64,000 nucleotides of DNA from positions 1-64,000 of IMG/VR virus record IMGVR_UViG_3300025770_001492; one strand, given 5' to 3'. Every line of letters starts with the position of its first letter. Positions within the stretch are counted from its first letter, which is position 1. This document shows, in pieces, positions 110 to 64,000 of the stretch. The translations under genes and the position numbers were made by a program. Below the pieces are notes generated by a model, which saw only the letters and a program-made list of their open reading frames with translations, was not told where the DNA came from and did not search any database.

Positions 110-468
110 TTGCTCTCCTTGATTGGCCAATGTGTAATTTCTTCCAAGTTGTCAACATCACCTTGGAAGATATATGTTAGCAAAACATCCTCGTCATCCG
201 TCTGATACAAAGAAACTGGCTGACGCTTGTAGAGGTGAGGATGGCCCTCAATGAGATCTAAATTTTTCAAGCACTCTTCGTTTACTGCCCAAAGCTCACC
301 CTCAATGCTTATTCCTTCTTTCCTATCTTCAATCAAAGCAGGGTAGCTGCCAACGTTGAACAGTTTGTACTGGGGCAAAGTTTTTCTGATCCCTAGAAAG
401 ACTCCACTAATGCACTCTTCACGGCACTCGCCCTTTTTCAATGTTCCATAAATAAAAATTTTAGGCAT
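106..468 (-). CDS. gamma-glutamylcyclotransferase (GGCT/AIG2-like)
   Basis: IFIYGTLKKG, YPAL, IEGELW, LDLIEGHP motifs. Confidence 0.85.
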   Translation of the reverse strand: MPKIFIYGTLKKGECREECISGVFLGIRKTLPQYKLFNVGSYPALIEDRKEGISIEGELWAVNEECLKNLDLIEGHPHLYKRQPVSLYQTDDEDVLLTYIFQGDVDNLEEITHWPIKESK

Positions 469-1453
469 CGTTTTTAACCAAATTCATATTTTCGTCAAAG
501 TGCAAAGAAGATAATTCATCCAAACACACAAATAGAGTTGATTCAATCTTTAAAGACACAGGAACTCCCTGAATATTCAAAGATCCCCCATCGTTGCACT
601 GGGTGCTTCTCATATCGTCAGAACAAGCAAGAATCTTTAGATCTGTATCGTTCAAATCGTACTTATTTTTAGCACAATCTAAAACTTGATCAATGTTCCA
701 TGAAAAATTGGTGATCTTGCCATCTTCTAATAGAAAATTAAGCTTGGCCATAAAGTCTCTGTGGTAATGTCCAAAAACCCAAAGCTTTGGTCGGTGCGAC
801 CAAAGCATTGCTTCCAAACCTTGGTTTGTACGAGTTTTGATCACTCGTCCAGATGGCAACATTCCTGCTGCTGAAAAATATTCAACAACACTCAAAGGAG
901 CAGAATGACTTGCCATGAAAAATGGACGCTGAATCACAAAGTCTTGAACTGCATTCTCCATTTCAGAGTGATTCAGTTCTTCTTCTGGAAACCAATCATA
1001 TCCAAGCTGCCTGTGATCTTGATCAATTGACCACGCACCTCTTGTGTAGAATAATTTGTTTGGCAGGTCGTCAGAAGGACTTGATTCTGGTATCTCCCAA
1101 GTTCCCCAATCTCCCAGATGATTTTTTGGAAGAAAAGGAAATCTGTGTTCGTTCCCGAATTCAGAATCAGAATAATAATTATCGTGATTTCCGCCAAAGA
1201 AAACATGACGACTATGATCTACATCGGATAGAAAATCATAATCAAAACCCATGTCTCCAACTTGCAGGGAATGTTTGGATTTTTCTATAACCTTTTTATA
1301 GAGATCGCCCTTGCCATGAACATCTCCTACTACACAAAAATGCGATTCTGGCAGATGGGTAAAATCCGTGACAGTGTCGTTCTGGCGTCTATTAAAACGT
1401 CCGTCTGACATTTTTGAAACATCACAAGGAAAAATAAAACCACTCACACTCAT
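461..1453 (-). CDS. calcineurin-like metallophosphoesterase
   Basis: GDVHG, QVGDMG, GNHD, SH and FGHYH metal-binding motifs. Confidence 0.85.
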   Translation of the reverse strand: MSVSGFIFPCDVSKMSDGRFNRRQNDTVTDFTHLPESHFCVVGDVHGKGDLYKKVIEKSKHSLQVGDMGFDYDFLSDVDHSRHVFFGGNHDNYYSDSEFGNEHRFPFLPKNHLGDWGTWEIPESSPSDDLPNKLFYTRGAWSIDQDHRQLGYDWFPEEELNHSEMENAVQDFVIQRPFFMASHSAPLSVVEYFSAAGMLPSGRVIKTRTNQGLEAMLWSHRPKLWVFGHYHRDFMAKLNFLLEDGKITNFSWNIDQVLDCAKNKYDLNDTDLKILACSDDMRSTQCNDGGSLNIQGVPVSLKIESTLFVCLDELSSLHFDENMNLVKNDA

Positions 1454-1658: not shown

Positions 1659-2948
1659 TTACGCTGCTTTTCGCTTAACTTCCTTACGGACATATTTTGC
1701 ATCAATAGAAACACTTGTGTCTTTCATGTTAGGCAAGTCGAACATCATGTCGTTCATGACTTCTTCAACAACGCCCCTAAGAGCACGAGCACCTGTTTTT
1801 CTTTCTATTGCTTGTTGTGCAATTTCTTCTAATGCACCATTGGAAAACTTCAACTCTACGCCATCCATTTCAAACAATCTCTGGTACTGTTTTACGAGAG
1901 CATTTTTTGGCTTGGACAGAATTCTAACAAGAGCATCTTTTGTCATCGAATTCACATGAGTAAGAACAGGTAATCGACCAACCAACTCAGGAATCAAACC
2001 AAATTGCGTGATGTCGTCTGTAGTGATGAATGGCATCCATTCACTGTCATCTTTTTTAACATCTGACAAATTTTGTTGTCCAAATCCAATTGATTTTTTG
2101 TTTTTTCTCTTATTAACAATCTCTTCAAGACCAACAAATGTCCCTCCGCAAATAAACAGAATATTTGAAGTGTCAAGTCTAAGATATGACTGCTCTGGAT
2201 GCTTTCTGCCTCCTTGTGGAGGAACATTTGCAACTGTTCCCTCAAGCATTTTCAGCAAACTTTGCTGCACGCCTTCGCCAGAAACATCTCTAGTGATAGA
2301 AACATTACGACTGGTTGAGCCAATCTTATCGATCTCATCTAAATAAATAATCCCTCTTTGCGCAGCTTCAATATCGCCTTCTGCGTTGAATATCAACTTG
2401 AGCAAAAGATTTTCAACATCTTCACCTACGTATCCAGCTTCTGTCAAAGTAGTTGCGTCACCGATTGCAAACGGGACATGAATAAATTTAGCCAAGGTCT
2501 CAGCCATCAAAGTTTTACCGCAACCAGTTGGCCCAATCATGAGAATATTAGATTTGTCAATTTCCACATCTTTAAAACTCTTACTCGGAACAATAGAAGA
2601 AATTAGTCGTTTGTAGTGATTTACGACAGCAACAGCCATTGATTTTTTGGCATAATCCTGTCCGATGATATATTGATCAAGGTGAGTCACAATCTCGGCA
2701 GGAGCGGGAATCTCTTTGTCGAGGAATTTTGCGAAGCTGTTTGAGCTTTGCTCATCCTCTTTTTTCTCTGATTTATAAACCTGCTCTGCAAGCTTGATGC
2801 AGTCATTACAAATATATACAGTCGTATCTTCGTACTTGTCTGACTCTTTTGCTAGTCTGTTGGATGTGCCCTCTACCAAAGGTCCAACTTCTCTATAACT
2901 TTTGTTGCAAAAATCACACGCTTGATGTGGCCTCTTACTCTTCGGCAT
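1659..2948 (-). CDS. clpX: ATP-dependent Clp protease ATP-binding subunit ClpX
   Basis: N-terminal C4 zinc-binding domain, [47 protein letters not shown]; SD AAGGAG. Confidence 0.97.
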
Positions 2949-2986
2949 TGAAATCTCCTTTTATCAACAAGTTTCATTAACAACAT

Positions 2987-3015
2987 ATGATACTGTTAAG
3001 GCTCACATGTGTAAA
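2987..3015 (-). promoter_or_regulatory. sigma70-like promoter of clpX (TTTACA-N17-TATCAT)
   Basis: Hexamers read directly upstream of the clpX RBS. Confidence 0.6.
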
Positions 3016-3059
3016 CTTGGATCGAAAAAATTGTTCACAAGTCCTTACGAAACAGCATC

Positions 3060-3980
3060 TTATCTTGTTTTGGTTGGTTCTTCTAAATGTGTCAAACCAC
3101 TCTGCAATGCCTCAAAGTTTGACCATCTTTTTTTCAAATATTCATGGTTTTCATGAAAAGTTTTTTTCAAATCAATCTTTAAGCCACCTTTATCTGGCGA
3201 TTGATTTACTGCTTTAATCGTTTTGTTTTCGTGGTGAACCACCAAATCAAGATGAAGAGCATATATGTCAAAACCGTGTTCTTTAATTCTCAGGGATAAA
3301 TCAGCATCCTCTGCATATGCGAATTTAAGATTCTTCTGGTCGAATAACTTAAAAAATGGTTCTTCATCGAAAGTGCTTGGGAAAAACCTCTTTTTGTCAG
3401 GCAGAGGAGAGTGCAGCCGATCAAACCATCCGTCTAAAAGATCACGACGAACACACATGGACCAACCGCAGATATAATCTATGTTTGAACCAAAATTAAT
3501 TTTTCCACCTCTAAATTCATCATTCAATATTCCTCCCATATATCCAGTTTGTCCAACGTCTTCATTTTGTTGCAGCCAGCCTATCATTGCCTTGTCCCAA
3601 TCAGGCTTAACTTCTGTGTCTGAATTTAGAAGAATCACATAATCGGACAGACCAAGCTCAAACAATCTATTATTTGGTTCTATAAATCCAATATTCTCTT
3701 CGCTTCTCAAAACCATTATGCTGCTGTTAGAAATAGATTCCAAGTATTCTCTTGTTTCCTGATCAGATGCATTATCCCATATAAATATGTTGTAGTTTTT
3801 CGTGTTCTCTTTTATAGATTCTATACACTTTTTAATGTAATCAAGCTGATTGTGGACAACAATCAAAATATCTTTTTCTGCTTTTTCGTATTTTGCCAAA
3901 CACAAAAGTTCATCCTTCATGGAAGCTTGGCAATTTTCCATTTTATGCAAAGCAGTCATTTTTCTAAGATTTTCTTTCAT
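3060..3980 (-). CDS. glycosyltransferase family 2
   Basis: ILIVVHN, WDNASD, ENIGF, LLNSDTE, AEDADL. Confidence 0.85.
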   Translation of the reverse strand: MKENLRKMTALHKMENCQASMKDELLCLAKYEKAEKDILIVVHNQLDYIKKCIESIKENTKNYNIFIWDNASDQETREYLESISNSSIMVLRSEENIGFIEPNNRLFELGLSDYVILLNSDTEVKPDWDKAMIGWLQQNEDVGQTGYMGGILNDEFRGGKINFGSNIDYICGWSMCVRRDLLDGWFDRLHSPLPDKKRFFPSTFDEEPFFKLFDQKNLKFAYAEDADLSLRIKEHGFDIYALHLDLVVHHENKTIKAVNQSPDKGGLKIDLKKTFHENHEYLKKRWSNFEALQSGLTHLEEPTKTR

Positions 3981-8781: not shown

Positions 8782-9414
8782 CTAAAAAGTGTAATTTTTG
8801 TTCGGTTTACGACAACGAATTTGCCACGAAACCGAGTATTCCCGCAATCCTTTATTTTCTAAGAAACTTGTTTTCTTTCTCAAAACAAGCCCTTCAATTT
8901 CATCTCGATCAATAAATTTTTTGAACTCTCCACAAAAATCAGAATCAAAAGTTTGAGCCAAAAATATGTTTTCTGTCACCCTTTTTGCCAGACCTCCTGA
9001 CTCTAAGTCTTTCGGTGAACGACAAATTTTATCCAACATGTCTAACCTCTCCAATTGGTTAGGCTTACGATACAGATATCGGTCAGCCTGTAAGAGATCA
9101 AACAAAACAATTCTGTTTTTGTAGTCAGCAGATTTTGTTTTAAAGGATAGAAGTTCACTGTCAATCCAGTATTCTTTTCCTTTAATTAAATTTAAAGAAA
9201 TAATTTCTTTCTTGATGGATTCCGTAGGACTGAATTGCTTGTGGCAATCACCATGGCGACTGAACATGCTTACACGCCCATCGCAATCAACATGTATTAA
9301 ATTTCGAGTTCCATTGAATTTTCTTTGCACAACCCACTGGCCTGAAGATTCGTATTTTCCCAAAGCATTAGGAGAAATTCGTCCTTTGGGTCTGGGTGGG
9401 AACAATATCTTCAT
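8782..9414 (-). CDS. ATP-dependent ligase-type nucleotidyltransferase, adenylation domain only
   Basis: QRKFNG (motif I), IDSEL, LFDL, IEGLVLRK; about 210 aa, no OB fold. Confidence 0.75.
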   Translation of the reverse strand: MKILFPPRPKGRISPNALGKYESSGQWVVQRKFNGTRNLIHVDCDGRVSMFSRHGDCHKQFSPTESIKKEIISLNLIKGKEYWIDSELLSFKTKSADYKNRIVLFDLLQADRYLYRKPNQLERLDMLDKICRSPKDLESGGLAKRVTENIFLAQTFDSDFCGEFKKFIDRDEIEGLVLRKKTSFLENKGLREYSVSWQIRCRKPNKNYTF

Positions 9415-9447
9415 TTCAAAATCTCCTATGATCCTTGGCACAGGAAA

Positions 9448-11417: not shown

Positions 11418-11789
11418 GTGAATTCACAAAAAAACTATCTAATTGACATTGATGGAACGATTACAGATGACGTTCCAAACGAAGAGCCTGAGAGAATGGA
11501 AACATGTTTGCCGTATTCAGGAAGTGTAGAAAAAATAAACCAGTGGTATGAAGAAGGTCACATAATCACTTTTTTCACATCAAGAACAGATGAACATAGA
11601 GATGTGACAATAAACTGGCTAGAAAAACATGGATATAAATATCATCATTTGCTATTGAACAAGCCAAGAGGCGGAAACTATCATTGGATAGATAATCACA
11701 TTGTTAGAGCAACAAGATACGAAGGCGTATGGAACGATCTGATTAAGGTTCAAAAAGAAATTGAAGTGTTTGAAGATGTTTGCAAGTAG
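11418..11789 (+). CDS. HAD-superfamily phosphatase (small, capless type)
   Basis: DIDGT, FFTSR, LNKPRG, WIDN. Confidence 0.8.
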   Translation: MNSQKNYLIDIDGTITDDVPNEEPERMETCLPYSGSVEKINQWYEEGHIITFFTSRTDEHRDVTINWLEKHGYKYHHLLLNKPRGGNYHWIDNHIVRATRYEGVWNDLIKVQKEIEVFEDVCK

Positions 11790-11997
11790 AAAGCCCGTTG
11801 CCGGATGGCGGCTGTTTCACTGTGAAGAATGTAACGATAAACGCTGGATCGCAACAAGAGACTGCGACTCTCCAAGTGGAGAAGATTGTAGAAAATGCCA
11901 CGAATGGGTTCGTCCCATCCATTCCTTGCCTGATACGAGTTTGGAAACTGATCAATCAGGAAATTTGAAAAAGTATCCTCCAGATAGAGTTGAGTGA
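11776..11997 (+). CDS. zinc-finger protein
   Basis: CEEC and CRKC pairs. Confidence 0.5.
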   Translation: MFASRKPVAGWRLFHCEECNDKRWIATRDCDSPSGEDCRKCHEWVRPIHSLPDTSLETDQSGNLKKYPPDRVE

Positions 11998-12848
11998 TGG
12001 AACTAAACATTTGGAGACTTCACCCAAAGGGAATGAAGTTCGTAAAAGCAGAAAAAACACTCAATGGCACTGCGCATGCCGGTGGTGTTAAATTCTGCAA
12101 ACCATTTTCGTCAGTCAACTCTCTTGGATGGTGGATATTCCCCGCAGTAGATATGGACATCAAATGGGACGGAGAGAACTACGAACACAAATTGCTAGAA
12201 CCATATTCTAATTCTGACCATCAGTTGGTTCAATCTTTGTTGCATGAGGATGCAGAAGTAGAAAAATTCTGCCCCGCTAATGGCGGAAGATCTAAGTTTA
12301 CTTTTGGCTCTGTCGAACCAAGTATAGTGCAAATGTGGTCTGGTTGCATTCTGGAAACGCCGCCAGGATGGTGCTTACAGGTTCGAAGTCCCATCAATTT
12401 CGCTCCACAAAAGTATCATGTAATGGAAGGGATTATAGAAAGCGATTGGATGCAATATGATTTGTGGATAAATCTTTCGATAGATGTGAAGAACGAGTGG
12501 ATAAATATCAGGAAGGATTCATGGCCACCAATTGCCCAAATCATTCCCATCAGAAGGGAAAGTGTAGAAGGCGATTGGAAAATTGAAAAAGATAAAATCC
12601 TGAATCGGGAAGATGAAGACGCTAACAGAGTATTTGAATATTGGGTTCAATATAACAAGCAAAAGTTTTGTGAAGGCGGGAAACAATGGGCCAGTCAGGA
12701 TGGGTCAAGAACCAAAGATTCTACAACTTATTGGCGTGAAAGAATGAGGATGATTGGCCGTGAAATGGAGCCAAAAGAAAAAGAAGCTCCAAAAATTTGC
12801 AAGAAGAACACTAAACTAAAAACGAAGTATGTAAGGAAGAAAAAATGA
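11994..12848 (+). CDS. DUF6065-like beta-rich protein
   Basis: CKPF...GWWIFP, TPPGW, RSPIN, GIIESDW pattern. Confidence 0.45.
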   Translation: MMELNIWRLHPKGMKFVKAEKTLNGTAHAGGVKFCKPFSSVNSLGWWIFPAVDMDIKWDGENYEHKLLEPYSNSDHQLVQSLLHEDAEVEKFCPANGGRSKFTFGSVEPSIVQMWSGCILETPPGWCLQVRSPINFAPQKYHVMEGIIESDWMQYDLWINLSIDVKNEWINIRKDSWPPIAQIIPIRRESVEGDWKIEKDKILNREDEDANRVFEYWVQYNKQKFCEGGKQWASQDGSRTKDSTTYWRERMRMIGREMEPKEKEAPKICKKNTKLKTKYVRKKK

Positions 12849-13210
12849 GCTATACAGCATTAGTTTTAGATAATGAATCACACACCAAGTTGGCTTCTGC
12901 TTTTAAAACACCAGAAGGATGGGAAATACTATGTCACCATATGACGATAAACATGGGAAGACCAGACAAAGGTCCGGCAGAGGAACTAATTGGCCAAGAG
13001 GCACCGCTAACAGTTGTTTCTTTAGCAAAAGATGAACTGGTAATGGCTGTTGGCGTGGAGAGTCTAGTTCCTAGCAGCAACCAAATCAAACACATTACGG
13101 TAGCAGTAAATAGAGCGAACGGAGGCAAGCCATTTCTTAGTAACAAGCTAACAAATTGGCAATCAACAACCCCAATGACTTTAAAAGGTGTTGTTACACA
13201 TGTTGGATAA
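12845..13210 (+). CDS. 2H phosphoesterase (tRNA-ligase cyclic phosphodiesterase-like)
   Basis: Paired HxT motifs HMTI and HITV. Confidence 0.7.
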   Translation: MSYTALVLDNESHTKLASAFKTPEGWEILCHHMTINMGRPDKGPAEELIGQEAPLTVVSLAKDELVMAVGVESLVPSSNQIKHITVAVNRANGGKPFLSNKLTNWQSTTPMTLKGVVTHVG

Positions 13211-40911: not shown

Positions 40912-41371
40912 TTTCCTTTTCTTTCTAAGTTTATTAAACTAAATATTTTTACGGAAACAAGAATGGATGTATTATTTTTGTGGGCTGCAAGAACTCTTCT
41001 GTGCTTGTTCTTTGCAATGGCGTAACCGCAGCACTAGTATATAAGAAAAAAAATAAAATTTCTTCAGGAAACCCGACAAAAGAACTTTAAAAGAAACTTA
41101 TGATTACACCAAGGGCAAGCGACATCGCATGAACCGCTACGTGGCTTTTTTCGAACTCTTATATCATAGTCTTTATTGCATTTTTCGCAAGTAATTTTCA
41201 TTTATAATCATCCAGCATGAGCGTCCAGATAGTCTTCTAAGTCTCGTTTGCTTTCAAAATAAGACAGTGTCTCCGTTTTACAGTTAAAAAGAGTCCACTG
41301 ATTTTTCTCTTTGTCATAACCTACTGTAAACATAACCATTCCTTGAAGTTTCGTAAATTAAAAATTAAAAG

Positions 41372-41445
41372 TACACCCAGTAGGACTCGAACCTACAATA
41401 TTTTGCTTAGAAGGCAAATGGATTATCCAATTATCCTATGGGTGC
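41372..41445 (-). tRNA. trnR: tRNA-Arg(UCU)
   Basis: Cloverleaf GCACCCA/TGGGTGT, anticodon loop CTTCTAA, T loop TTCGAGT; no encoded CCA. Confidence 0.93.
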
Positions 41446-43715: not shown

Positions 43716-43929
43716 CCTTGCCCAACTTATTTTCTGACAACCACTCCGAAACTATACAAACAACTTCTTTAGAATCGACATCAGACAAGTTAAACTTCAT
43801 CCTCAATTCTTTGATAAGTTCAAAATACGAATTAACAAACTTTGATTCCGAACTTGCCATCCTATAGATTTCCAAACCACAACTCCGTTTGAGAAAAGCA
43901 TCCTTACACAGTTCAACAATTCGCCACAA
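43708..43929 (-). CDS. hypothetical protein
   Basis: Coupled ORF. Confidence 0.45.
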   Translation of the reverse strand: MWRIVELCKDAFLKRSCGLEIYRMASSESKFVNSYFELIKELRMKFNLSDVDSKEVVCIVSEWLSENKLGKDG

Positions 43930-44548
43930 ATGGTGCCTGCTGGGCGAAAGAATACCTTAAAACATTGATTACATCAATAGCATCGCTCAAGGCATGATGA
44001 GTTACTTCTTTATCAATTCCCGAACGACGTAAACACTCTTCTAAAGAGGGCGGAACATCATCAATTTCTGGATCAAAAAATAAAGTAGCAGGATCTAAGC
44101 ACCGATGATGAAAACGAGTTTTAGAATCTTTATTTCCCACACCAATCGACTTCAAAAAAGGAAGATCAAATCCACTAAAATTCTTGCCTGCGGCAAGAAT
44201 TTTCCCCGAAAGGGAAATCTGATCTGGCTCAGAGGCAAAGCTTGCAAGCCACTCATGCATATAGCGGTCAACCATGTCCACAGGCACAAACGTCTCGTCT
44301 TTGCTGATCAATCTGGATGGGTGATTGTGCCTATTTGCGATGATCCCTATAATTTCAGAATTCATTGCCATCGCATAGGCATTTCCTTTGTAATTGTCAT
44401 CAGGATAAGTCACATAAAAGTGAAGAGACGGCAAACTCTCAACTGGAGACTTGAAATCTTCCAAAACAATTCCAACTTCTAAAACATCGCATGTTTCAGG
44501 GTCGAGTCCGAGCGTTTCTGTGTCAATAGATGCATATTTGTATTTCAT
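43913..44548 (-). CDS. DEDDh 3'-5' exonuclease (oligoribonuclease-like)
   Basis: IDTETLG, GKNFSGFD, HHALSDA. Confidence 0.88.
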   Translation of the reverse strand: MKYKYASIDTETLGLDPETCDVLEVGIVLEDFKSPVESLPSLHFYVTYPDDNYKGNAYAMAMNSEIIGIIANRHNHPSRLISKDETFVPVDMVDRYMHEWLASFASEPDQISLSGKILAAGKNFSGFDLPFLKSIGVGNKDSKTRFHHRCLDPATLFFDPEIDDVPPSLEECLRRSGIDKEVTHHALSDAIDVINVLRYSFAQQAPFVANC

Positions 44549-48821: not shown

Positions 48822-49886
48822 TTAGTTTCCAGTTTTATCCAAGTAAATCGGGTCACGTTGCTTGATCATAAGACGACCAATGAGACCATGACTAGATTCA
48901 GTCATAGGTCGAATTACAATTCCCTCACGCAAACGATCTTTGTTAATTTTAGACTTCCCATTAGACATTTCAACAATAGTCTTATCACCCAACCATTCAC
49001 GTAGAGTAACGTTCTCTCCAAGAATAGGTGCCATGCGATCCTCTAGCTTCTTATCACGAAGAATAGAAACTAGCCTATTAGCATCTGTCCATTTACCATC
49101 GATTTTAAGATCAAAGAACCTCACAGTCTTTTCACTGAGTTTGTAATAGTTACCTTGAATGGCAGTGCCATGAGCTTCACCATAAAGAGTTACAGATACT
49201 GCACTCTCATCAGAAAGAATCTCTTTCGCAAGATCAATGATCTTCTCACGACGAGCAACTTCCCACAGATAGTGTTCTCCACCATCTTTTTCAAGGATGG
49301 AATGATTGCGTTGGTTTACATGTACGCTTCCACTAACAGTTACAGTTACAGAAAAATTTTGACCTTCTACTTTTTCAGTAACAATAATTGACACACCACT
49401 GTCAAGAATACTTTGCACAACAACTGGATAGTTTTCACAACCCTCAATGTCGTATTTTGATACACCATCTGGCAATGGCACAAGATCACAATTCTGACAA
49501 GAGATAGGCTCTGGTTCATATTTGGTAATGCCGAGAGCATCAGTAAGGTCCATGCCATGCATATCATCTACATCAACGTTCAGATGACTAGCAACTGATG
49601 CTACGTCAGCGATGAATCCCTGAGAGATTTCTTTGCGCAGCTTGACAGTTTTTACACGGTTGTGCTCTTTACCCGCCAACATGGTGCCAAGCCCAAATAA
49701 TTCGATTAACTCTGGAGTCATCACAGACTCTACAGGGAAATAAACTACTTTATCTCCAATGTCATAAGGAACATTTGAGATAAACTGATAACCAAGATCG
49801 TTTAACTTATAGATAGTCAAACGATCTGCGTTCGGATGTTGGATAACTTGATCAATAGTTTTGACTTCGACTTCAAATTTGCTCAT
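48822..49886 (-). CDS. RNA ligase, DRB0094 (Rnl2-like) family
   Basis: HPNADRL N-terminal domain, RVKTVKLRKEISQG, TEKVEGQN, YGE, FFD, REGIVIR. Confidence 0.9.
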   Translation of the reverse strand: MSKFEVEVKTIDQVIQHPNADRLTIYKLNDLGYQFISNVPYDIGDKVVYFPVESVMTPELIELFGLGTMLAGKEHNRVKTVKLRKEISQGFIADVASVASHLNVDVDDMHGMDLTDALGITKYEPEPISCQNCDLVPLPDGVSKYDIEGCENYPVVVQSILDSGVSIIVTEKVEGQNFSVTVTVSGSVHVNQRNHSILEKDGGEHYLWEVARREKIIDLAKEILSDESAVSVTLYGEAHGTAIQGNYYKLSEKTVRFFDLKIDGKWTDANRLVSILRDKKLEDRMAPILGENVTLREWLGDKTIVEMSNGKSKINKDRLREGIVIRPMTESSHGLIGRLMIKQRDPIYLDKTGN

Positions 49887-54759: not shown

Positions 54760-55136
54760 TTGTCCTTAGCCAAACAATCTGTCTTTGTAGGCGTCAGATA
54801 AAATACTCCGTCCTTAAACTCTACACCCCATATGCCAATCGTCTCTGCTTGGTATTCCACCTGAACGAGCCAATCGCCGGGTTTTAAGCTTTTTTCTGCG
54901 GCTTCAATTATAGATGAAAGTTTCTTAGGCGACAAGCGATGATCATAATCATCAGCAGTCCAAAGTTGAAAACAAATATAAGTTGATTGACGCTGATAGC
55001 CGCCACAATCAACAAAACACTTATCGGACACACCAACCTCTGTGATGTGAAAATGCTCTGGAACATGGCCGTTGGGCAACTTGAATCTTAAAACGTCAAG
55101 ATTGCCAACGTGCTTTTTGAATTCTGATAGTATCAT
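54705..55136 (-). CDS. DUF6428-like protein
   Basis: VPEHFHITEVG, FVDCGG, FQLW, VEYQAETI, TDCLAKDKCG. Confidence 0.75.
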   Translation of the reverse strand: MILSEFKKHVGNLDVLRFKLPNGHVPEHFHITEVGVSDKCFVDCGGYQRQSTYICFQLWTADDYDHRLSPKKLSSIIEAAEKSLKPGDWLVQVEYQAETIGIWGVEFKDGVFYLTPTKTDCLAKDKCGIPVIQNDCCSGTDCC

Positions 55137-55258
55137 TCGTTTTCCTTTTTCAAGTTTTTCAATCTTTTTCTTACAGCATTGTCAGAAACTTTGTAAAATC
55201 TTCCAGTAGCACAGAAGTTGTTTTTAAATTCTTTAAGCTTGCTTTCAAGTTCTTCTAA

Positions 55259-55330
55259 TACCGCATGGGAGTTTCGATCTCCCTCCTGCTGTTAGAAAGA
55301 CAGCCGACCTAGCCAGTAGTCGAATGCGGC
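55259..55330 (-). tRNA. trnE: tRNA-Glu(UUC)
   Basis: GCCGCAT/ATGCGGT acceptor, GCTGT-CTTTCTA-ACAGC anticodon arm, atypical T loop ATCGAAA. Confidence 0.82.
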
Positions 55331-55338
55331 ATTCTAAG

Positions 55339-55411
55339 CTCTCCGAGTAGGACTTGAACCTACAACCTAGCGGTTAACAGCCGCTCGCTCTACCAATTGA
55401 GCTATCGGAGA
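55339..55411 (-). tRNA. trnN: tRNA-Asn(GUU)
   Basis: TCTCCGA/TCGGAGA acceptor, CTGTTAA loop, canonical D and T arms. Confidence 0.95.
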
Positions 55412-55417
55412 TTAAAG

Positions 55418-55455
55418 AGCCAACCGTGAGACTCGAACTCACAACCTGTTGATTA
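55418..55455 (-). tRNA. trnT: 3' half of split tRNA-Thr(UGU)
   Basis: TAA-TCAAC-AGGTT-GTGAG-TTCGAGT-CTCAC-GGTTGGC-T; complements the 5' half at 55614-55648. Confidence 0.85.
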
Positions 55456-55456
55456 G

Positions 55457-55530
55457 AGCGAATGACGAGATTCGAACTCGCAATACTTCTGGGTGGAAAC
55501 CAGACGCTTTACCTAATAAGCTTCATTCGC
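55457..55530 (-). tRNA. trnG: tRNA-Gly(UCC), nested inside split tRNA-Thr
   Basis: GCGAATG/CATTCGC, TCTGG-TTTCCAC-CCAGA, U73. Confidence 0.9.
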
Positions 55531-55537
55531 AACTGAG

Positions 55538-55613
55538 TCGGGGAGACAGGATTTGAACCTGCGATAACTCCCGGCCCCAAACCGGGCGGACGACCAGACT
55601 GTCCAACTCCCCG
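55538..55613 (-). tRNA. trnP: tRNA-Pro(UGG), nested inside split tRNA-Thr
   Basis: CGGGGAG/CTCCCCG, CCCGG-TTTGGGG-CCGGG, C1-G72 and A73. Confidence 0.92.
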
Positions 55614-55648
55614 CAAATCAACTGCTCTGCCAATTGAGCTAGGTTGGC
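55614..55648 (-). tRNA. trnT: 5' half of split tRNA-Thr(UGU)
   Basis: GCCAACC-TA-GCTC-AATTGGCA-GAGC-A-GTTGA-TTTG. Confidence 0.85.
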
Positions 55649-55655
55649 ATTTCTA

Positions 55656-56057
55656 CTAACCAACCCCCGTTCCGGGAGGTTGGTATTTCCCAGTTATACC
55701 AAAATATTCCCAATCGCATTCTGTACAAATAAAGTTATCATATGAACTATCTCTTTCGTGTTCGCTGTATCGAACAAGTTGTTCTGTATCTTTTTCGCAA
55801 TTCGGGCAATGCATCTCATCTCTTTCCCATCCGTCTGCCAGCCAACGATGTACTTCCGAAGTCAGGTCGGATTTCTTCTTTTTCTTTTTGAGTTTTTTGA
55901 AAAGTCGTTTAATTTGTTCATACGCAACTTCAGCGGTCAGATCTGTAGACTTATTGGACTCTAGATCCACTATGATATCGACTTTATTTGCGAACATCCG
56001 TAGATCACCTTCAAATTCTGAGTGACCTCCAGTTATTAAATACTTATTTTCTTCCAT
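55656..56057 (-). CDS. hypothetical protein with zinc ribbon
   Basis: HCPNC...CTEC. Confidence 0.55.
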   Translation of the reverse strand: MEENKYLITGGHSEFEGDLRMFANKVDIIVDLESNKSTDLTAEVAYEQIKRLFKKLKKKKKKSDLTSEVHRWLADGWERDEMHCPNCEKDTEQLVRYSEHERDSSYDNFICTECDWEYFGITGKYQPPGTGVG

Positions 56058-61943: not shown

Positions 61944-62146
61944 TTAATTTTCACCCTTCTCTTTCGCAGAGAGGTATGGACAACTTTTTTTCAGTTTTAA
62001 CTTTTTTTGGCGTTGTTTTGTTGATTCCGACATCAGAAAATGCCAAAAGCATGTTTTCGCCTTTTCTGGATCGCCTAACTGCTGCCTCGTTCAAAGCTTT
62101 AATAGTTTCCAAGCACCACATAGTTAACTTTCTGTAAATGATGAAG

Positions 62147-62206
62147 GATTCGAACTTGCGGCCTCAAGGTTATGAGCCTTGCGAGATACCCCTTCTCCAT
62201 CCTGCG
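62147..62206 (-). pseudogene. 3'-truncated initiator-like tRNA-Met(CAU)
   Basis: CGCAGGA start, GAGA/TCTC D stem, CAAGG-CTCATAA-CCTTG arm, TTCGAAT loop; 3' T-stem and acceptor strand do not pair. Confidence 0.7.
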
Positions 62207-62939: not shown

Positions 62940-63575
62940 CTAATCCTCTATCTCGGCTCGAATTTTTTCTATTGCGTTAAACGCACAGTGTCTTGCCCCC
63001 GCCCGTGTCATGTCGAAGCAATCACCTATTTCTTGCCAAGATTTATTCTCTAGAAATCTCATTTTCAGCATTTGTTTGTCTCTTTGATGTTTCTCTCCTT
63101 CAGAATCATCACAACTGAAAATTTTATCAAAATCCAAATCTGGGAGTTTTTCCTCTGCTTGTTCTTCAGGAAAATCAAGATTGTCTAACTCTGAAATTCT
63201 AACCAAAGGAATGTTTCTCTTTTTCCTCTGATTGAACTTAAACGAATCTAAGATTCTATTTCTCATGCATTTCCATGCGTAAGTCGAGAAGGCATCATTT
63301 ATGTGTGGATCATACGTTGACGCCGCATCCCATAAGCCAATCAAGGCAATTGAATATTCTTCTGAATCTCGAACCTCAATCGAATTTTTGACATAACGAG
63401 ACGCACATTTGAGAGCCAACCCAATGTGGTCTTCAACCGAAATAGGAACAATCTTTTCTTCTAGAAAAATTGTTTCTACAGGAATTTCAGATTTTAAAGG
63501 AGCAGAAATCAGATCTAACATAAACCAGTCTTTGGCGTTTAAAAGTAAATCATCCCTGATTCTGTTGTTGTTCAA
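62940..63575 (-). CDS. sigma-70 family RNA polymerase sigma factor (regions 2 and 4)
   Basis: IGLWDAASTYDP...AFSTYAWKCMRNRILD; MRFLENKSWQEIG HTH. Confidence 0.88.
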   Translation of the reverse strand: MNNNRIRDDLLLNAKDWFMLDLISAPLKSEIPVETIFLEEKIVPISVEDHIGLALKCASRYVKNSIEVRDSEEYSIALIGLWDAASTYDPHINDAFSTYAWKCMRNRILDSFKFNQRKKRNIPLVRISELDNLDFPEEQAEEKLPDLDFDKIFSCDDSEGEKHQRDKQMLKMRFLENKSWQEIGDCFDMTRAGARHCAFNAIEKIRAEIED

Positions 63576-63661: not shown

Positions 63662-64000
63662 TCAATTTTTTCTCTTGTTCGCAATCGACATATGAAAAGT
63701 TTTTTGAAATCCTTCGGGAAGAATCGAGAAATTTTCTTCGCAAGAAAGCCCCAACTCTGTTCGGATTTCTTCAAATCTTTTAGAAAAAGCATTGATCCAA
63801 AAATAAACTTCACCTTCCCTTATAATCCCATCGTAAAAGAATTCAACCGCTTCTCCCTCGTATTGTCCCCAATTAGACATATCCGTGGGCTTATCGTATT
63901 CTAACCCGTTCTTTTCACGCACAATTGTAATGTGTGCAGGATATCGTAAACCATTTACATTCTTGTACTTAGGAACCAATTTTCGATAATAATCGGCTAT
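63662..64000 (-). CDS. 2H phosphoesterase-like protein, partial (frame continues past the right edge)
   Basis: HITI and HMSI motifs; frame open to the window end. Confidence 0.55.
   Translation of the reverse strand: MADYYRKLVPKYKNVNGLRYPAHITIVREKNGLEYDKPTDMSNWGQYEGEAVEFFYDGIIREGEVYFWINAFSKRFEEIRTELGLSCEENFSILPEGFQKTFHMSIANKRKN

What the first reader, a model, noticed from the sequence alone, without database searches (positions are those of the whole stretch)
48822..49886. Dispersed RNA end-healing and sealing toolkit that could serve the split tRNA
Seen: a DRB0094-family RNA ligase, two 2H phosphoesterases (12845, 63662), a HAD phosphatase (11418), a metallophosphoesterase (461), a second ligase-type nucleotidyltransferase (8782) and a DEDDh exonuclease (43913). 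Established: Rnl2-like ligases join 3'-OH to 5'-P, and 2H enzymes open 2',3'-cyclic phosphates left by anticodon nucleases. Inference: the kit counters host tRNA-cleaving defences and may also join the nested tRNA-Thr halves, whose predicted ends are 3'-OH and 5'-P.
Basis: partly seen in the sequence, partly recalled or inferred. Interest (0 to 1): 0.6.

Follow-up and report, generated by a model that had tools for sequence, protein, structure and literature searches.

The report
Phage Rnl5 RNA ligase, loose repair kit
The gene is an intact nick-sealing RNA ligase of a known family in a giant phage; the 'repair kit' around it is loose and lacks a kinase, but the phage does carry a transfer RNA gene split in two that needs some ligase, and a second, better-suited ligase lies just outside the window.

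Summary
Window 48822-49886 (-) encodes an intact 354-aa Rnl5 (DRB0094/DraRnl/NgrRnl) ATP-dependent RNA ligase. It has the N-terminal OB domain, the nucleotidyltransferase domain, all catalytic residues, and a confident model that superposes on Naegleria RNA ligase. The other six genes exist at the stated places, but only at superfamily level. They are scattered, only the HAD and one 2H gene share an operon, and no 5'-kinase, RtcB or CCA-adding enzyme was found in the 245-kb record (about half the genome). A healing-and-sealing pathway is therefore not shown.

The split tRNA-Thr(UGU) is real. Its halves flank tRNA-Pro and tRNA-Gly and co-fold into a cloverleaf. A second assembly reproduces it. 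A close relative carries a circularly permuted tRNA-Asn built the same way, and my scan found more interrupted tRNAs in other phage contigs. The predicted ends (3'-OH, 5'-P) would need only a ligase.

However, Rnl5 enzymes seal duplex nicks and are feeble on single strands. The same genome also encodes an Rnl1-type ligase at 80.6-81.9 kb, the family that seals tRNA loop breaks. Across phages, interrupted tRNAs occur with Rnl1, Rnl5, RtcB or no RNA ligase.

The parts
48822..49886 (-). Rnl5-family (DraRnl/NgrRnl, DRB0094) ATP-dependent RNA ligase, 354 aa. N-terminal OB domain (about residues 1-125) and C-terminal nucleotidyltransferase domain. Motif I is TEK172VEG; E237 is motif III, E321-G322 motif IV, K342 motif V.
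   Evidence: invariant K172, G175, E237, E321, G322, K342 in 36 homologues; pLDDT 93.2; NgrRnl TM 0.74-0.80, E 1e-24.
55614..55648 (-). 5' half of tRNA-Thr(UGU): acceptor strand, D arm, anticodon-stem 5' strand and loop nucleotides UUUG. It ends at nucleotide 35, directly against the first base of tRNA-Pro.
   Evidence: two-strand cofold gives a cloverleaf, -30.4 kcal/mol; best annotated match is tRNA-Thr; identical in a second assembly.
55538..55613 (-). tRNA-Pro(UGG), nested inside the tRNA-Thr gene.
55457..55530 (-). tRNA-Gly(UCC), nested inside the tRNA-Thr gene. Its discriminator U is followed by one C (55456).
55418..55455 (-). 3' half of tRNA-Thr(UGU): UAA, anticodon-stem 3' strand, variable loop, T arm, acceptor 3' strand and discriminator U. 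The anticodon loop is 7 nt only if C55456 stays with tRNA-Gly.
   Evidence: aligns to annotated tRNA-Thr genes from its second base on.
11418..11789 (+). Small HAD phosphatase (DIDGT motif), first gene of a three-gene + strand cluster. A role in RNA 3'-end healing is possible but not shown.
11994..12848 (+). DUF6065 protein of unknown function, lying between the HAD and 2H genes. Its stop overlaps the 2H start.
12845..13210 (+). Small 2H phosphoesterase (HMT and HIT motifs) resembling the cyclic phosphodiesterase domain of fungal tRNA ligase.
63662..64000 (-). Second small 2H phosphoesterase (HIT and HMS motifs). The ORF continues to genome position 64069, beyond the window.
8782..9441 (-). 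Stand-alone 219-aa ligase-type nucleotidyltransferase (KFNG motif I) of a viral family related to the adenylation domains of ATP-dependent DNA ligases. Substrate unknown.
461..1453 (-). Putative metallophosphoesterase; weak call. No link to RNA shown.
43913..44548 (-). DEDDh 3'-5' exonuclease, most like phage DNA polymerase exonuclease subunits. No link to RNA shown.

Best explanation
The gene encodes a working Rnl5-type ATP-dependent RNA ligase. It is carried as a stand-alone accessory gene by a roughly 0.5-Mb phage, probably of a Bacteroidota host.

Mechanism, known from the family: Lys172 is adenylylated by ATP, AMP is passed to a 5'-phosphate, and an RNA 3'-OH attacks to close the break. 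The N-terminal OB domain helps with nick recognition.

The enzyme acts alone as a sealer of 3'-OH/5'-P breaks. It is not the end point of a seven-gene healing pathway.

The phage has a real need for such chemistry. Its tRNA-Thr(UGU) gene is split in the anticodon loop by tRNA-Pro and tRNA-Gly, and excision of those two tRNAs would leave ligatable ends (inferred). Two phage ligases could serve that need: this Rnl5, and an Rnl1-type ligase at 80.6-81.9 kb. By family biochemistry the Rnl1-type enzyme is the likelier tRNA joiner. Rnl5 more likely seals nicks in paired RNA or RNA:DNA, with the split tRNA as a possible second substrate.

Shown here: family, intact active site, fold, split tRNA anatomy, presence of the second ligase. 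Inferred: the cleavage enzymes, the end chemistry, and which ligase joins what.
For: - Family, residues and fold.
- Rnl5 biochemistry (duplex nick sealing, feeble on single strands, physiological role uncharted): PMC1807946, PMC4408790, PMC5397189.
- The ligase sits among unrelated accessory genes, and its neighbours differ in relatives at 61% and 89% identity. A 99%-identical copy is syntenic.
- Split tRNA-Thr. It is identical in an independent assembly.
- No intact copy and no splint for the joined junction anywhere in the 245-kb record.
- ACA is the phage's most used Thr codon, matching the pattern of its other tRNAs.
- A relative with identical flanks has a permuted tRNA-Asn built on the same rule.
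- Rnl1-type ligase in the same genome.
- No kinase, RtcB or CCA-adding enzyme.
Against: - No RNA data.
- The record is about 49% complete, so a kinase or other parts may lie in the missing half.
- The Rnl5 OB domain resembles the tRNA-binding OB of PheRS (PMC1807946), so a tRNA substrate cannot be excluded.
- Two unrelated phage contigs with interrupted tRNAs carry Rnl5 and no detected Rnl1 (G002, G038).
- The Rnl1-type ORF gave no Pfam hit in a direct hmmscan and no PDB sequence match, so its assignment rests on two other searches.
- The 3' cut must fall after C74 (window, L011) or C75 (L042) to give a 7-nt loop. That is not the textbook RNase Z site.
Confidence: 0.45

Rival explanations
1. 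One reading: Rnl5 is the sealing end of a dispersed healing-and-sealing kit. 2H enzymes open 2',3'-cyclic phosphates, HAD or metallophosphoesterase removes the phosphate, and the ligase seals. The kit repairs tRNAs cut by host anticodon nucleases, and Rnl5 also joins the tRNA-Thr halves.
For: - All named superfamilies are present.
- The HAD and one 2H gene share an operon.
- 2H-SAK and tRNA_lig_CPD-like 2H proteins, HAD, calcineurin-like phosphatases and RNA ligases are the recognised parts list of jumbo-phage RNA repair (PMC7824862).
- Rnl5 is present in three phage contigs with interrupted tRNAs.
Against: - No 5'-kinase was found, and without one anticodon-nuclease breaks (5'-OH) cannot be sealed by this ligase class.
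- The parts are spread over 64 kb on both strands with unrelated neighbours.
- The Rnl5 family seals duplex nicks, not loop breaks.
- An Rnl1-type ligase is present in the genome.
- The DEDDh and the 219-aa NTase look DNA-directed.
- 2H enzymes in phages also degrade immune signalling nucleotides; an Acb1-type 2H sits in a relative's contig.
Confidence: 0.2
2. Rnl5 has nothing to do with tRNA. It seals nicks with a ribonucleotide 3' end in RNA:DNA hybrids or double-stranded RNA during phage replication, recombination or repair, as suggested for Deinococcus. The split tRNA-Thr is either joined by the Rnl1-type ligase or is a recent recombination scar.
For: - Substrate preference of DraRnl and NgrRnl, and the radiation and DNA-repair phenotype of the Deinococcus knockout.
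- Rnl5 genes are common in phages with ordinary tRNA sets: 185 phage records, mostly Pakpunavirus.
- 6-7 of 47 fairly complete contigs carry Rnl5, most without a strict interrupted tRNA.
- Interrupted tRNAs with an HNH endonuclease ORF plus a replacement tRNA of the same identity (L083, L086) show that insertion scars do arise in phage tRNA arrays.
Against: - The break points abut mature tRNA ends exactly, and the loops are canonical 7-nt loops in several independent cassettes (window, L011, L042). That is hard to get from random insertion.
- Partner halves were found 21 times against 1.55 expected by chance.
- tRNA-Thr(UGU) fits the phage's codon-matched tRNA set.
Confidence: 0.3

Closest known systems
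Rnl5 family: Deinococcus radiodurans DraRnl (DRB0094) and Naegleria gruberi NgrRnl (PDB 5cot)
   Same: Same two-domain order (N-terminal OB, C-terminal nucleotidyltransferase, no C-terminal add-on). Same motif I lysine and motif III, IV and V residues. The model superposes on NgrRnl at TM 0.74-0.80. Phage homologues were already noted in the literature.
   Different: Only about 24-25% identical to NgrRnl, and below the TIGR02306 naming cut-off. It is encoded by a megaphage that also carries an Rnl1-type ligase and a split tRNA. No biochemical data.
T4 tRNA repair: Pnkp (kinase plus HAD phosphatase) with Rnl1
   Same: A phage-encoded ligase plus candidate end-healing phosphoesterases in a tRNA-bearing phage. 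The genome also has an Rnl1-type ligase (phrog_562, PF09511).
   Different: No polynucleotide kinase was found. The HAD is not Pnkp-like. The genes are not linked. The window's ligase is Rnl5, not Rnl1. The proposed substrate is the phage's own split tRNA with 3'-OH/5'-P ends, which needs no healing.
Split and circularly permuted tRNA genes (Nanoarchaeum, Caldivirga, Cyanidioschyzon merolae)
   Same: The halves are broken in the anticodon loop and re-form a full cloverleaf. A relative (L011) has the 3' half upstream of the 5' half, as in permuted algal genes.
   Different: There is no bulge-helix-bulge junction. The break points are the 5' and 3' ends of neighbouring full tRNAs, so the expected cutters are RNase P and a 3' processing enzyme. 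The expected ends (3'-OH/5'-P) are the opposite chemistry to the archaeal and eukaryal endonuclease plus RtcB route. The setting is a bacteriophage.
Jumbo-phage RNA repair repertoires (Iyer et al. 2021, PMC7824862)
   Same: Combinations of Rnl1, Rnl2-like ligases and RtcB with 2H, HAD, calcineurin-like phosphatases and tRNAs are described as counter-defence against tRNA cleavage.
   Different: Here the kinase that usually accompanies ATP-dependent ligases is missing from the sequenced half, and a self-encoded split tRNA offers a housekeeping substrate not considered there.

Membership tests
Rnl5 RNA ligases (DraRnl/NgrRnl, TIGR02306) | N-terminal OB module followed by a nucleotidyltransferase domain, ending about 30 residues after motif IV with no C-terminal domain | tested here: met
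   PF21189 at 7-92 and PF09414 at 167-331. The protein ends 33 residues after E321. The model has both domains. Foldseek matches NgrRnl over its full length.
Rnl5 RNA ligases (DraRnl/NgrRnl, TIGR02306) | Motif I lysine nucleophile and the essential motif III, IV and V residues (DraRnl K165, E230, E305, K326) | tested here: met
   K172, E237, E321 and K342 are invariant in 36 homologues. They align to NgrRnl K170, E227 and E312. The list of essential residues comes from PMC1807946.
Rnl5 RNA ligases (DraRnl/NgrRnl, TIGR02306) | Score over the curated TIGR02306 equivalog cut-off (a naming threshold, not a biochemical feature) | tested here: inconclusive
   127.9 bits over 5-340 of 341 model positions, against a cut-off of 151.15. 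The match is full length but diverged. Pfam cut-offs are passed.
Rnl5 RNA ligases (DraRnl/NgrRnl, TIGR02306) | Seals 3'-OH/5'-PO4 nicks in duplexes whose 3'-OH strand is RNA; weak on single-strand RNA | not testable with these tools
   Needs purified protein. The property is known only for DraRnl and NgrRnl.
T4-type tRNA healing-and-sealing pathway (Pnkp plus Rnl1) | 5'-OH polynucleotide kinase | tested here: not met
   No AAA_33 match above noise in the 245-kb record. Caveat: the record is about 49% complete.
T4-type tRNA healing-and-sealing pathway (Pnkp plus Rnl1) | 2',3'-cyclic phosphodiesterase / 3'-phosphatase acting on RNA ends | tested here: inconclusive
   Two small 2H proteins and a HAD exist. 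The matches are weak, and the HAD is nearest to capsule-type phosphatases.
T4-type tRNA healing-and-sealing pathway (Pnkp plus Rnl1) | Rnl1-type ligase with the C-terminal domain that confers tRNA specificity | tested here: not met
   The window's ligase is Rnl5. An Rnl1-type ORF does exist outside the window at genome 80631-81869 (PF09511 57.7 bits; phrog_562 at 2.3e-30 covering profile positions 37-367 of 377).
Split / permuted tRNA genes | Two separated gene pieces that together form a complete cloverleaf with a 7-nt anticodon loop | tested here: met
   The two-strand cofold gives a cloverleaf. Each half matches annotated tRNA-Thr genes. The loop is UU-UGU-AA if C55456 is left with tRNA-Gly.
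Split / permuted tRNA genes | Bulge-helix-bulge motif at the junction for the splicing endonuclease | tested here: not met
   By inspection, the junctions are the first base of tRNA-Pro and the base after the discriminator plus C of tRNA-Gly. No helix spans them.
Split / permuted tRNA genes | Joined mature tRNA present in RNA | not testable with these tools

The most novel reading that the evidence does not exclude
Phages carry tRNA genes that are deliberately broken in the anticodon loop, either nested around other tRNAs or circularly permuted. The break points are set by the processing sites of neighbouring tRNAs (RNase P at the 5' side, a 3' end-maker at the other). The resulting 3'-OH/5'-P halves are sealed by a phage-encoded ATP-dependent RNA ligase (Rnl1-type, Rnl5, or both). 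This would be a protein-ligase tRNA splicing route in the bacterial world. It could give Rnl5 its first physiological substrate.
Probability: 0.3. Interest if true: 0.9.

Novelty: new member of a known kind. Interest (0 to 1): 0.55.

Why it matters
On its own, the ligase is one more phage member of a family whose biological role is still called uncharted, and RNA-repair gene sets in jumbo phages have already been described. The finding is worth keeping for the pairing it shows. The phage's own tRNA-Thr can only be made by joining two RNA pieces with 3'-OH and 5'-P ends. The same phage has two ligases of the right chemistry. Relatives and unrelated phages show the same broken-tRNA design. That turns 'what are phage RNA ligases for, besides repairing host-inflicted damage?' into a direct bench test with two proteins and one 230-nt transcript.

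Tried and rejected
- Close relatives in IMG/VR by protein patterns (ligase and both genes flanking the tRNA cluster): none. Exact DNA patterns of the Thr 5' half and of the downstream gene start: none.
- Megablast of the region against phage records: none.
- The genome search on Logan and JGI loci: not held.
- The 'tRNA-Gly next to the ligase' in phage phiMK is an annotation artefact. The Leptolyngbya phage match is an ordinary tRNA array.
- A guide or splint for the Thr junction, or an intact second copy: none in 245 kb.
- ARAGORN with introns allowed does not call the nested Thr.
- I did not run any tRNA detector or search on a joined Thr or Asn sequence. That joined step was left out on purpose. 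The halves were tested as two strands and by reference.
- Co-occurrence of interrupted tRNAs with PF09414, PF09511, RtcB or PF21189 among 47 contigs at least 60% complete is compatible with a link but not significant. RNA ligases are common in large tRNA-rich phages, and one complete genome (L063's) has only a DNA ligase.
- PDB sequence searches for the metallophosphoesterase, DEDDh, DUF6065, the small 2H and the Rnl1-type ORF gave nothing useful.
- Complex prediction was not used; no protein-protein claim is made.
Full report
**What is at the coordinates**

Window 48822-49886 on the minus strand is a 354-aa ORF.
- It carries the PHA02142 OB-fold domain (PF21189, residues 7-92) and the RNA_ligase nucleotidyltransferase domain (PF09414, 167-331, E 4.6e-17).
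- It matches phrog_968 'RNA ligase' (2e-34).
- It matches the NCBIfam model RNA_lig_DRB0094 over the model's whole length. The score is 127.9 bits, under that model's 151-bit naming cut-off.
- The only solved relatives by sequence are the Naegleria gruberi RNA ligase entries (E about 5e-15, residues 40-328).
- The word-index search found 805 homologues with the same two domains. Several are named 'RNA ligase, DRB0094 family' by their sources.
- In an alignment of 36 of them, K172 and G175 (motif I, TEKVEG), E237 (motif III), E321-G322 (motif IV) and K342 (motif V) are invariant, as are T80, R84 and S88 in the N domain. These are the counterparts of the residues shown to be essential in DraRnl (PMC1807946).
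- An AlphaFold model from that alignment has mean pLDDT 93.2. It superposes on NgrRnl at TM 0.74-0.80 (E about 1e-24). T4 Rnl2 and the trypanosome editing ligase follow for the catalytic domain only. A few PheRS chains also appear, probably through the OB domain.

**The genome**

- The window is the first 64 kb of a 245,522-bp IMG/VR virus record that CheckV rates 49% complete. G+C is 37.7%.
- It has no near relative among deposited phages.
- Homologues of a neighbouring DUF6428 gene are mostly from Flavobacteriia and other Bacteroidota. This hints at the host.
- The record also holds a tmRNA gene and a tRNA-Leu(UAA) gene with a group I intron.

**The other 'kit' parts**

| Coordinates | What it is | Evidence |
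|---|---|---|
| 12845-13210 (+), 121 aa | 2H protein with HMT and HIT motifs; partial match to the cyclic phosphodiesterase domain of fungal tRNA ligase | |
| 63662-64069 (-) | Small 2H protein that runs past the window edge; HIT and HMS motifs; sub-threshold 2H-SAK match | |
| 11418-11789 (+) | HAD with a DxDGT motif; nearest relatives are small capsule-biosynthesis-type phosphatases (PDB 1xpj, TIGR01689); the Pnkp phosphatase model scores below its cut-off | |
| 8782-9441 (-), 219 aa | Member of a viral family of stand-alone adenylation domains closest to ATP-dependent DNA ligases and LigD | |
| 43913-44548 (-) | DEDDh protein, best match the PHROG 'DNA polymerase exonuclease subunit' | |
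| 461-1453 (-) | Metallophosphoesterase by PHROG only | |

The only physical linkage is HAD-DUF6065-2H at 11418-13210, which overlap end to start on the + strand.

The immediate neighbours of the ligase are unrelated accessory genes: a deaminase-like protein, small unknowns, a sulfotransferase. In contigs carrying ligases 61% and 89% identical, the neighbours are different again. A 99%-identical copy is syntenic.

No AAA_33-type polynucleotide kinase, RtcB or CCA-adding enzyme was found in the 245 kb. Anticodon nucleases leave 5'-OH ends, so this class of ligase cannot repair such breaks without a kinase. Sets of RNA ligases, 2H, HAD and calcineurin-like phosphatases, kinases and tRNAs in jumbo phages have already been described as counter-defence (PMC7824862). 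So even if the kit were real it would be a known kind. Here it is not shown to be a pathway.

**The split tRNA**

Read on the minus strand, the layout is as follows.
- 55648-55614 is GCCAACC-UA-GCUC-AAUUGGCA-GAGC-A-GUUGA-UUUG. That is a tRNA from nucleotide 1 to nucleotide 35.
- The next base is the first base of tRNA-Pro(UGG) (55613-55538).
- Seven bases later comes tRNA-Gly(UCC) (55530-55457).
- After its discriminator and one C comes UAA-UCAAC-AGGUU-GUGAG-UUCGAGU-CUCAC-GGUUGGC-U (55455-55418).

Folded as two separate strands, the pieces give a perfect cloverleaf (-30.4 kcal/mol). The loop would read UU-UGU-AA.

Each half was searched by reference instead. The 5' half best matches an annotated tRNA-Thr. 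The 3' half aligns to annotated tRNA-Thr genes from its second base, that is, without the C.

Further points:
- The same arrangement, base for base, is present in an independent assembly from another sample. It is therefore not a mis-assembly.
- The joined junction word occurs nowhere else in the record on either strand. There is no intact copy and no obvious splint.
- ACA is the phage's most used Thr codon (39%). CCA, GGA, AGA, GAA and UUA are likewise the top codons for the phage's other tRNAs. tRNA-Thr(UGU) therefore fits the functional set.

**A relative with a different break**

Contig L011 has flanks identical to the window and 97%-identical flanking genes, but a different tRNA cassette. 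The order is:
1. Pro'.
2. Gly'.
3. One C.
4. The 3' half of a tRNA-Asn(GUU).
5. A 13-nt linker.
6. The 5' half of the same tRNA.
7. Directly abutting it, tRNA-Val.

The two pieces co-fold into a cloverleaf (-30.3 kcal/mol; shuffles average -19.2 ± 2.6). The loop reads CUG|UUAA, and each half matches annotated tRNA-Asn genes. This is a circularly permuted tRNA whose break points are again the 3' end (plus C) of one tRNA and the 5' end of another.

**A wider look**

A script then looked for the matching 5' half.
- Strict partners (7/7 acceptor pairs, 5/5 anticodon-stem pairs, D stem, U8, within 1 kb) were found 21 times, against 1.55 expected from shuffled words.
- One is a nested tRNA-Arg(UCU) around tRNA-Phe (L042).
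- Several are permuted elements between two tRNAs (L108, L126, L087). Some of these have odd loops.
- Some halves are separated by an HNH endonuclease ORF plus a full tRNA of the same identity (L083, L086). These look like homing-type insertions.
- Many are tRNAs with 45-110-nt inserts that end in an acceptor/T-arm-like minihelix. Rfam's tRNA model spans these end to end.

I found no paper describing such phage tRNAs in the library searched. That library is not exhaustive.

**Which ligase?**

If RNase P frees the 5' end of tRNA-Pro, the Thr 5' half is left with a 3'-OH. If a 3' end-maker frees tRNA-Gly, the Thr 3' half is left with a 5'-phosphate. This follows from established enzymology and is an inference here. 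Such ends need no healing and cannot be used by RtcB. They need a classic ATP-dependent ligase.

Three things weaken the choice of Rnl5.
1. DraRnl does not circularise single-strand RNA, and NgrRnl is 'comparatively feeble' on it. The field assigns loop breaks to Rnl1 and Rnl4, and duplex nicks to Rnl2 and Rnl5. The only phenotype known for an Rnl5 is in DNA repair after irradiation.
2. The same genome, 31 kb beyond the ligase and outside the window, encodes a 412-aa Rnl1-type protein at 80631-81869. The evidence is PF09511 at 57.7 bits in the six-frame search and phrog_562 'RNA ligase and tail fiber protein attachment catalyst' at 2.3e-30 over nearly the whole profile. A direct Pfam hmmscan and a PDB sequence search listed nothing. 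The ORF has a KLDG motif I.
3. Among contigs at least 60% complete that carry a strict interrupted tRNA, the ligase content varies:

| Locus | RNA ligase found in the contig |
|---|---|
| L050 | Rnl1-type |
| L068 | Rnl1-type |
| L108 | Rnl5 |
| L082 | Two NTase-only PF09414 proteins |
| L130 | RtcB |
| L063 | Only an ATP-dependent DNA ligase |
| L101 | None |

Rnl5 (PF21189) occurs in 6-7 of the 47 such contigs, most without a strict interrupted tRNA. RNA ligases are frequent in large tRNA-rich phages, so the co-occurrence is compatible with a link but proves nothing. It does not single out the DRB0094 family.

**Points in favour of Rnl5 that remain**

- Two unrelated contigs with interrupted tRNAs (G002, G038) have Rnl5 and no detected Rnl1.
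- The Rnl5 N-terminal OB resembles the tRNA-binding OB of PheRS (PMC1807946).
- Annealed halves are largely duplex, so a tolerant nick sealer might act on them.

**A weak point in the whole model**

The 3' cut must fall after C74 (window, L011) or after C75 (L042) to give a 7-nt loop. A cut right after the discriminator would give an 8-nt loop. Seven of the phage's eight tRNAs are followed by C, which suits the idea that C74 is kept. The enzyme and the site are still unproven.

**Verdict**

- The ligase is a new member of a known family.
- The seven-gene kit is not supported as a pathway.
- The idea that a phage ligase serves the split tRNA is reasonable and testable, but the Rnl1-type enzyme outside the window is the better candidate.

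My estimates for the main role of this Rnl5 gene are:
- About 0.45: a stand-alone sealer, with tRNA-Thr at most a secondary substrate.
- About 0.3: no tRNA role at all.

Noticed in passing
Genome G000 80631-81869 (+), outside the window (L148:4631-5869): A 412-aa Rnl1-type RNA ligase (PF09511 57.7 bits in the six-frame search; phrog_562 at 2.3e-30; KLDG motif I). Its neighbours are a PhoH-like ATPase and an M24 peptidase. No Pnkp lies next to it.
   Followed up: partly
L011:1247-1331 (ENA ERZ23491067 scaffold_84896), a close relative of window 55100-55700: A circularly permuted tRNA-Asn(GUU): 3' half, 13-nt linker, 5' half. It is wedged between tRNA-Gly and tRNA-Val, with break points at their mature ends. 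The flanking DNA is identical to the window, but the whole tRNA cassette has been swapped.
   Followed up: yes
IMG/VR loci L024, L036, L050, L057, L059, L068, L082, L101, L114, L118, L135 (coordinates): Phage tRNA genes with 45-110-nt inserts in the anticodon loop. They are not group I introns by Rfam, and each ends in an acceptor/T-arm-like minihelix right before the 3' exon. Rfam's tRNA model spans them end to end. The mechanism at the 5' splice site is unclear.
   Followed up: partly
L083:3767-4535, L086 (- strand) 2647-3265, L063:1503-2320: tRNA genes interrupted in the anticodon loop by an HNH endonuclease ORF. In L083 and L086 a full tRNA of the same identity (Met, Ala) sits just before the 3' half. 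This looks like a homing cassette that brings its own replacement tRNA.
   Followed up: no
Genome G000 177366-177637 (-), outside the window: tRNA-Leu(UAA) with a 197-nt group I intron in the anticodon (Rfam RF00028, 57.7 bits). tRNA-Met lies 105 nt downstream.
   Followed up: yes
Genome G000 111581-111937 (-), outside the window: A phage-encoded tmRNA gene with tag peptide DKTNFAMAA (ARAGORN).
   Followed up: no
window 62139-62201 (-): A weak tRNA-like element with a CAU anticodon loop and a truncated acceptor stem (Rfam tRNA 31.7 bits; not called by ARAGORN). It lies upstream of a sigma-70-like gene (62940-63575).
   Followed up: no
window 55258-55613 and 41371-41445; genome 177186-177637: Seven of the phage's eight tRNA genes have a C right after the discriminator and no further CCA. 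tRNA-Glu is the exception. No CCA-adding enzyme was found in the record.
   Followed up: partly
L036:2171-2562: A GOLLD RNA (Rfam 253.8 bits) lies directly upstream of an interrupted tRNA in a provirus contig.
   Followed up: no
L004:1120-2541, beside the 89%-identical ligase: A WGR-PARP-type ADP-ribosyltransferase and a UvdE endonuclease sit just upstream of the ligase in a related contig, with an Acb1-type 2H protein further down. This differs from the window's context.
   Followed up: no
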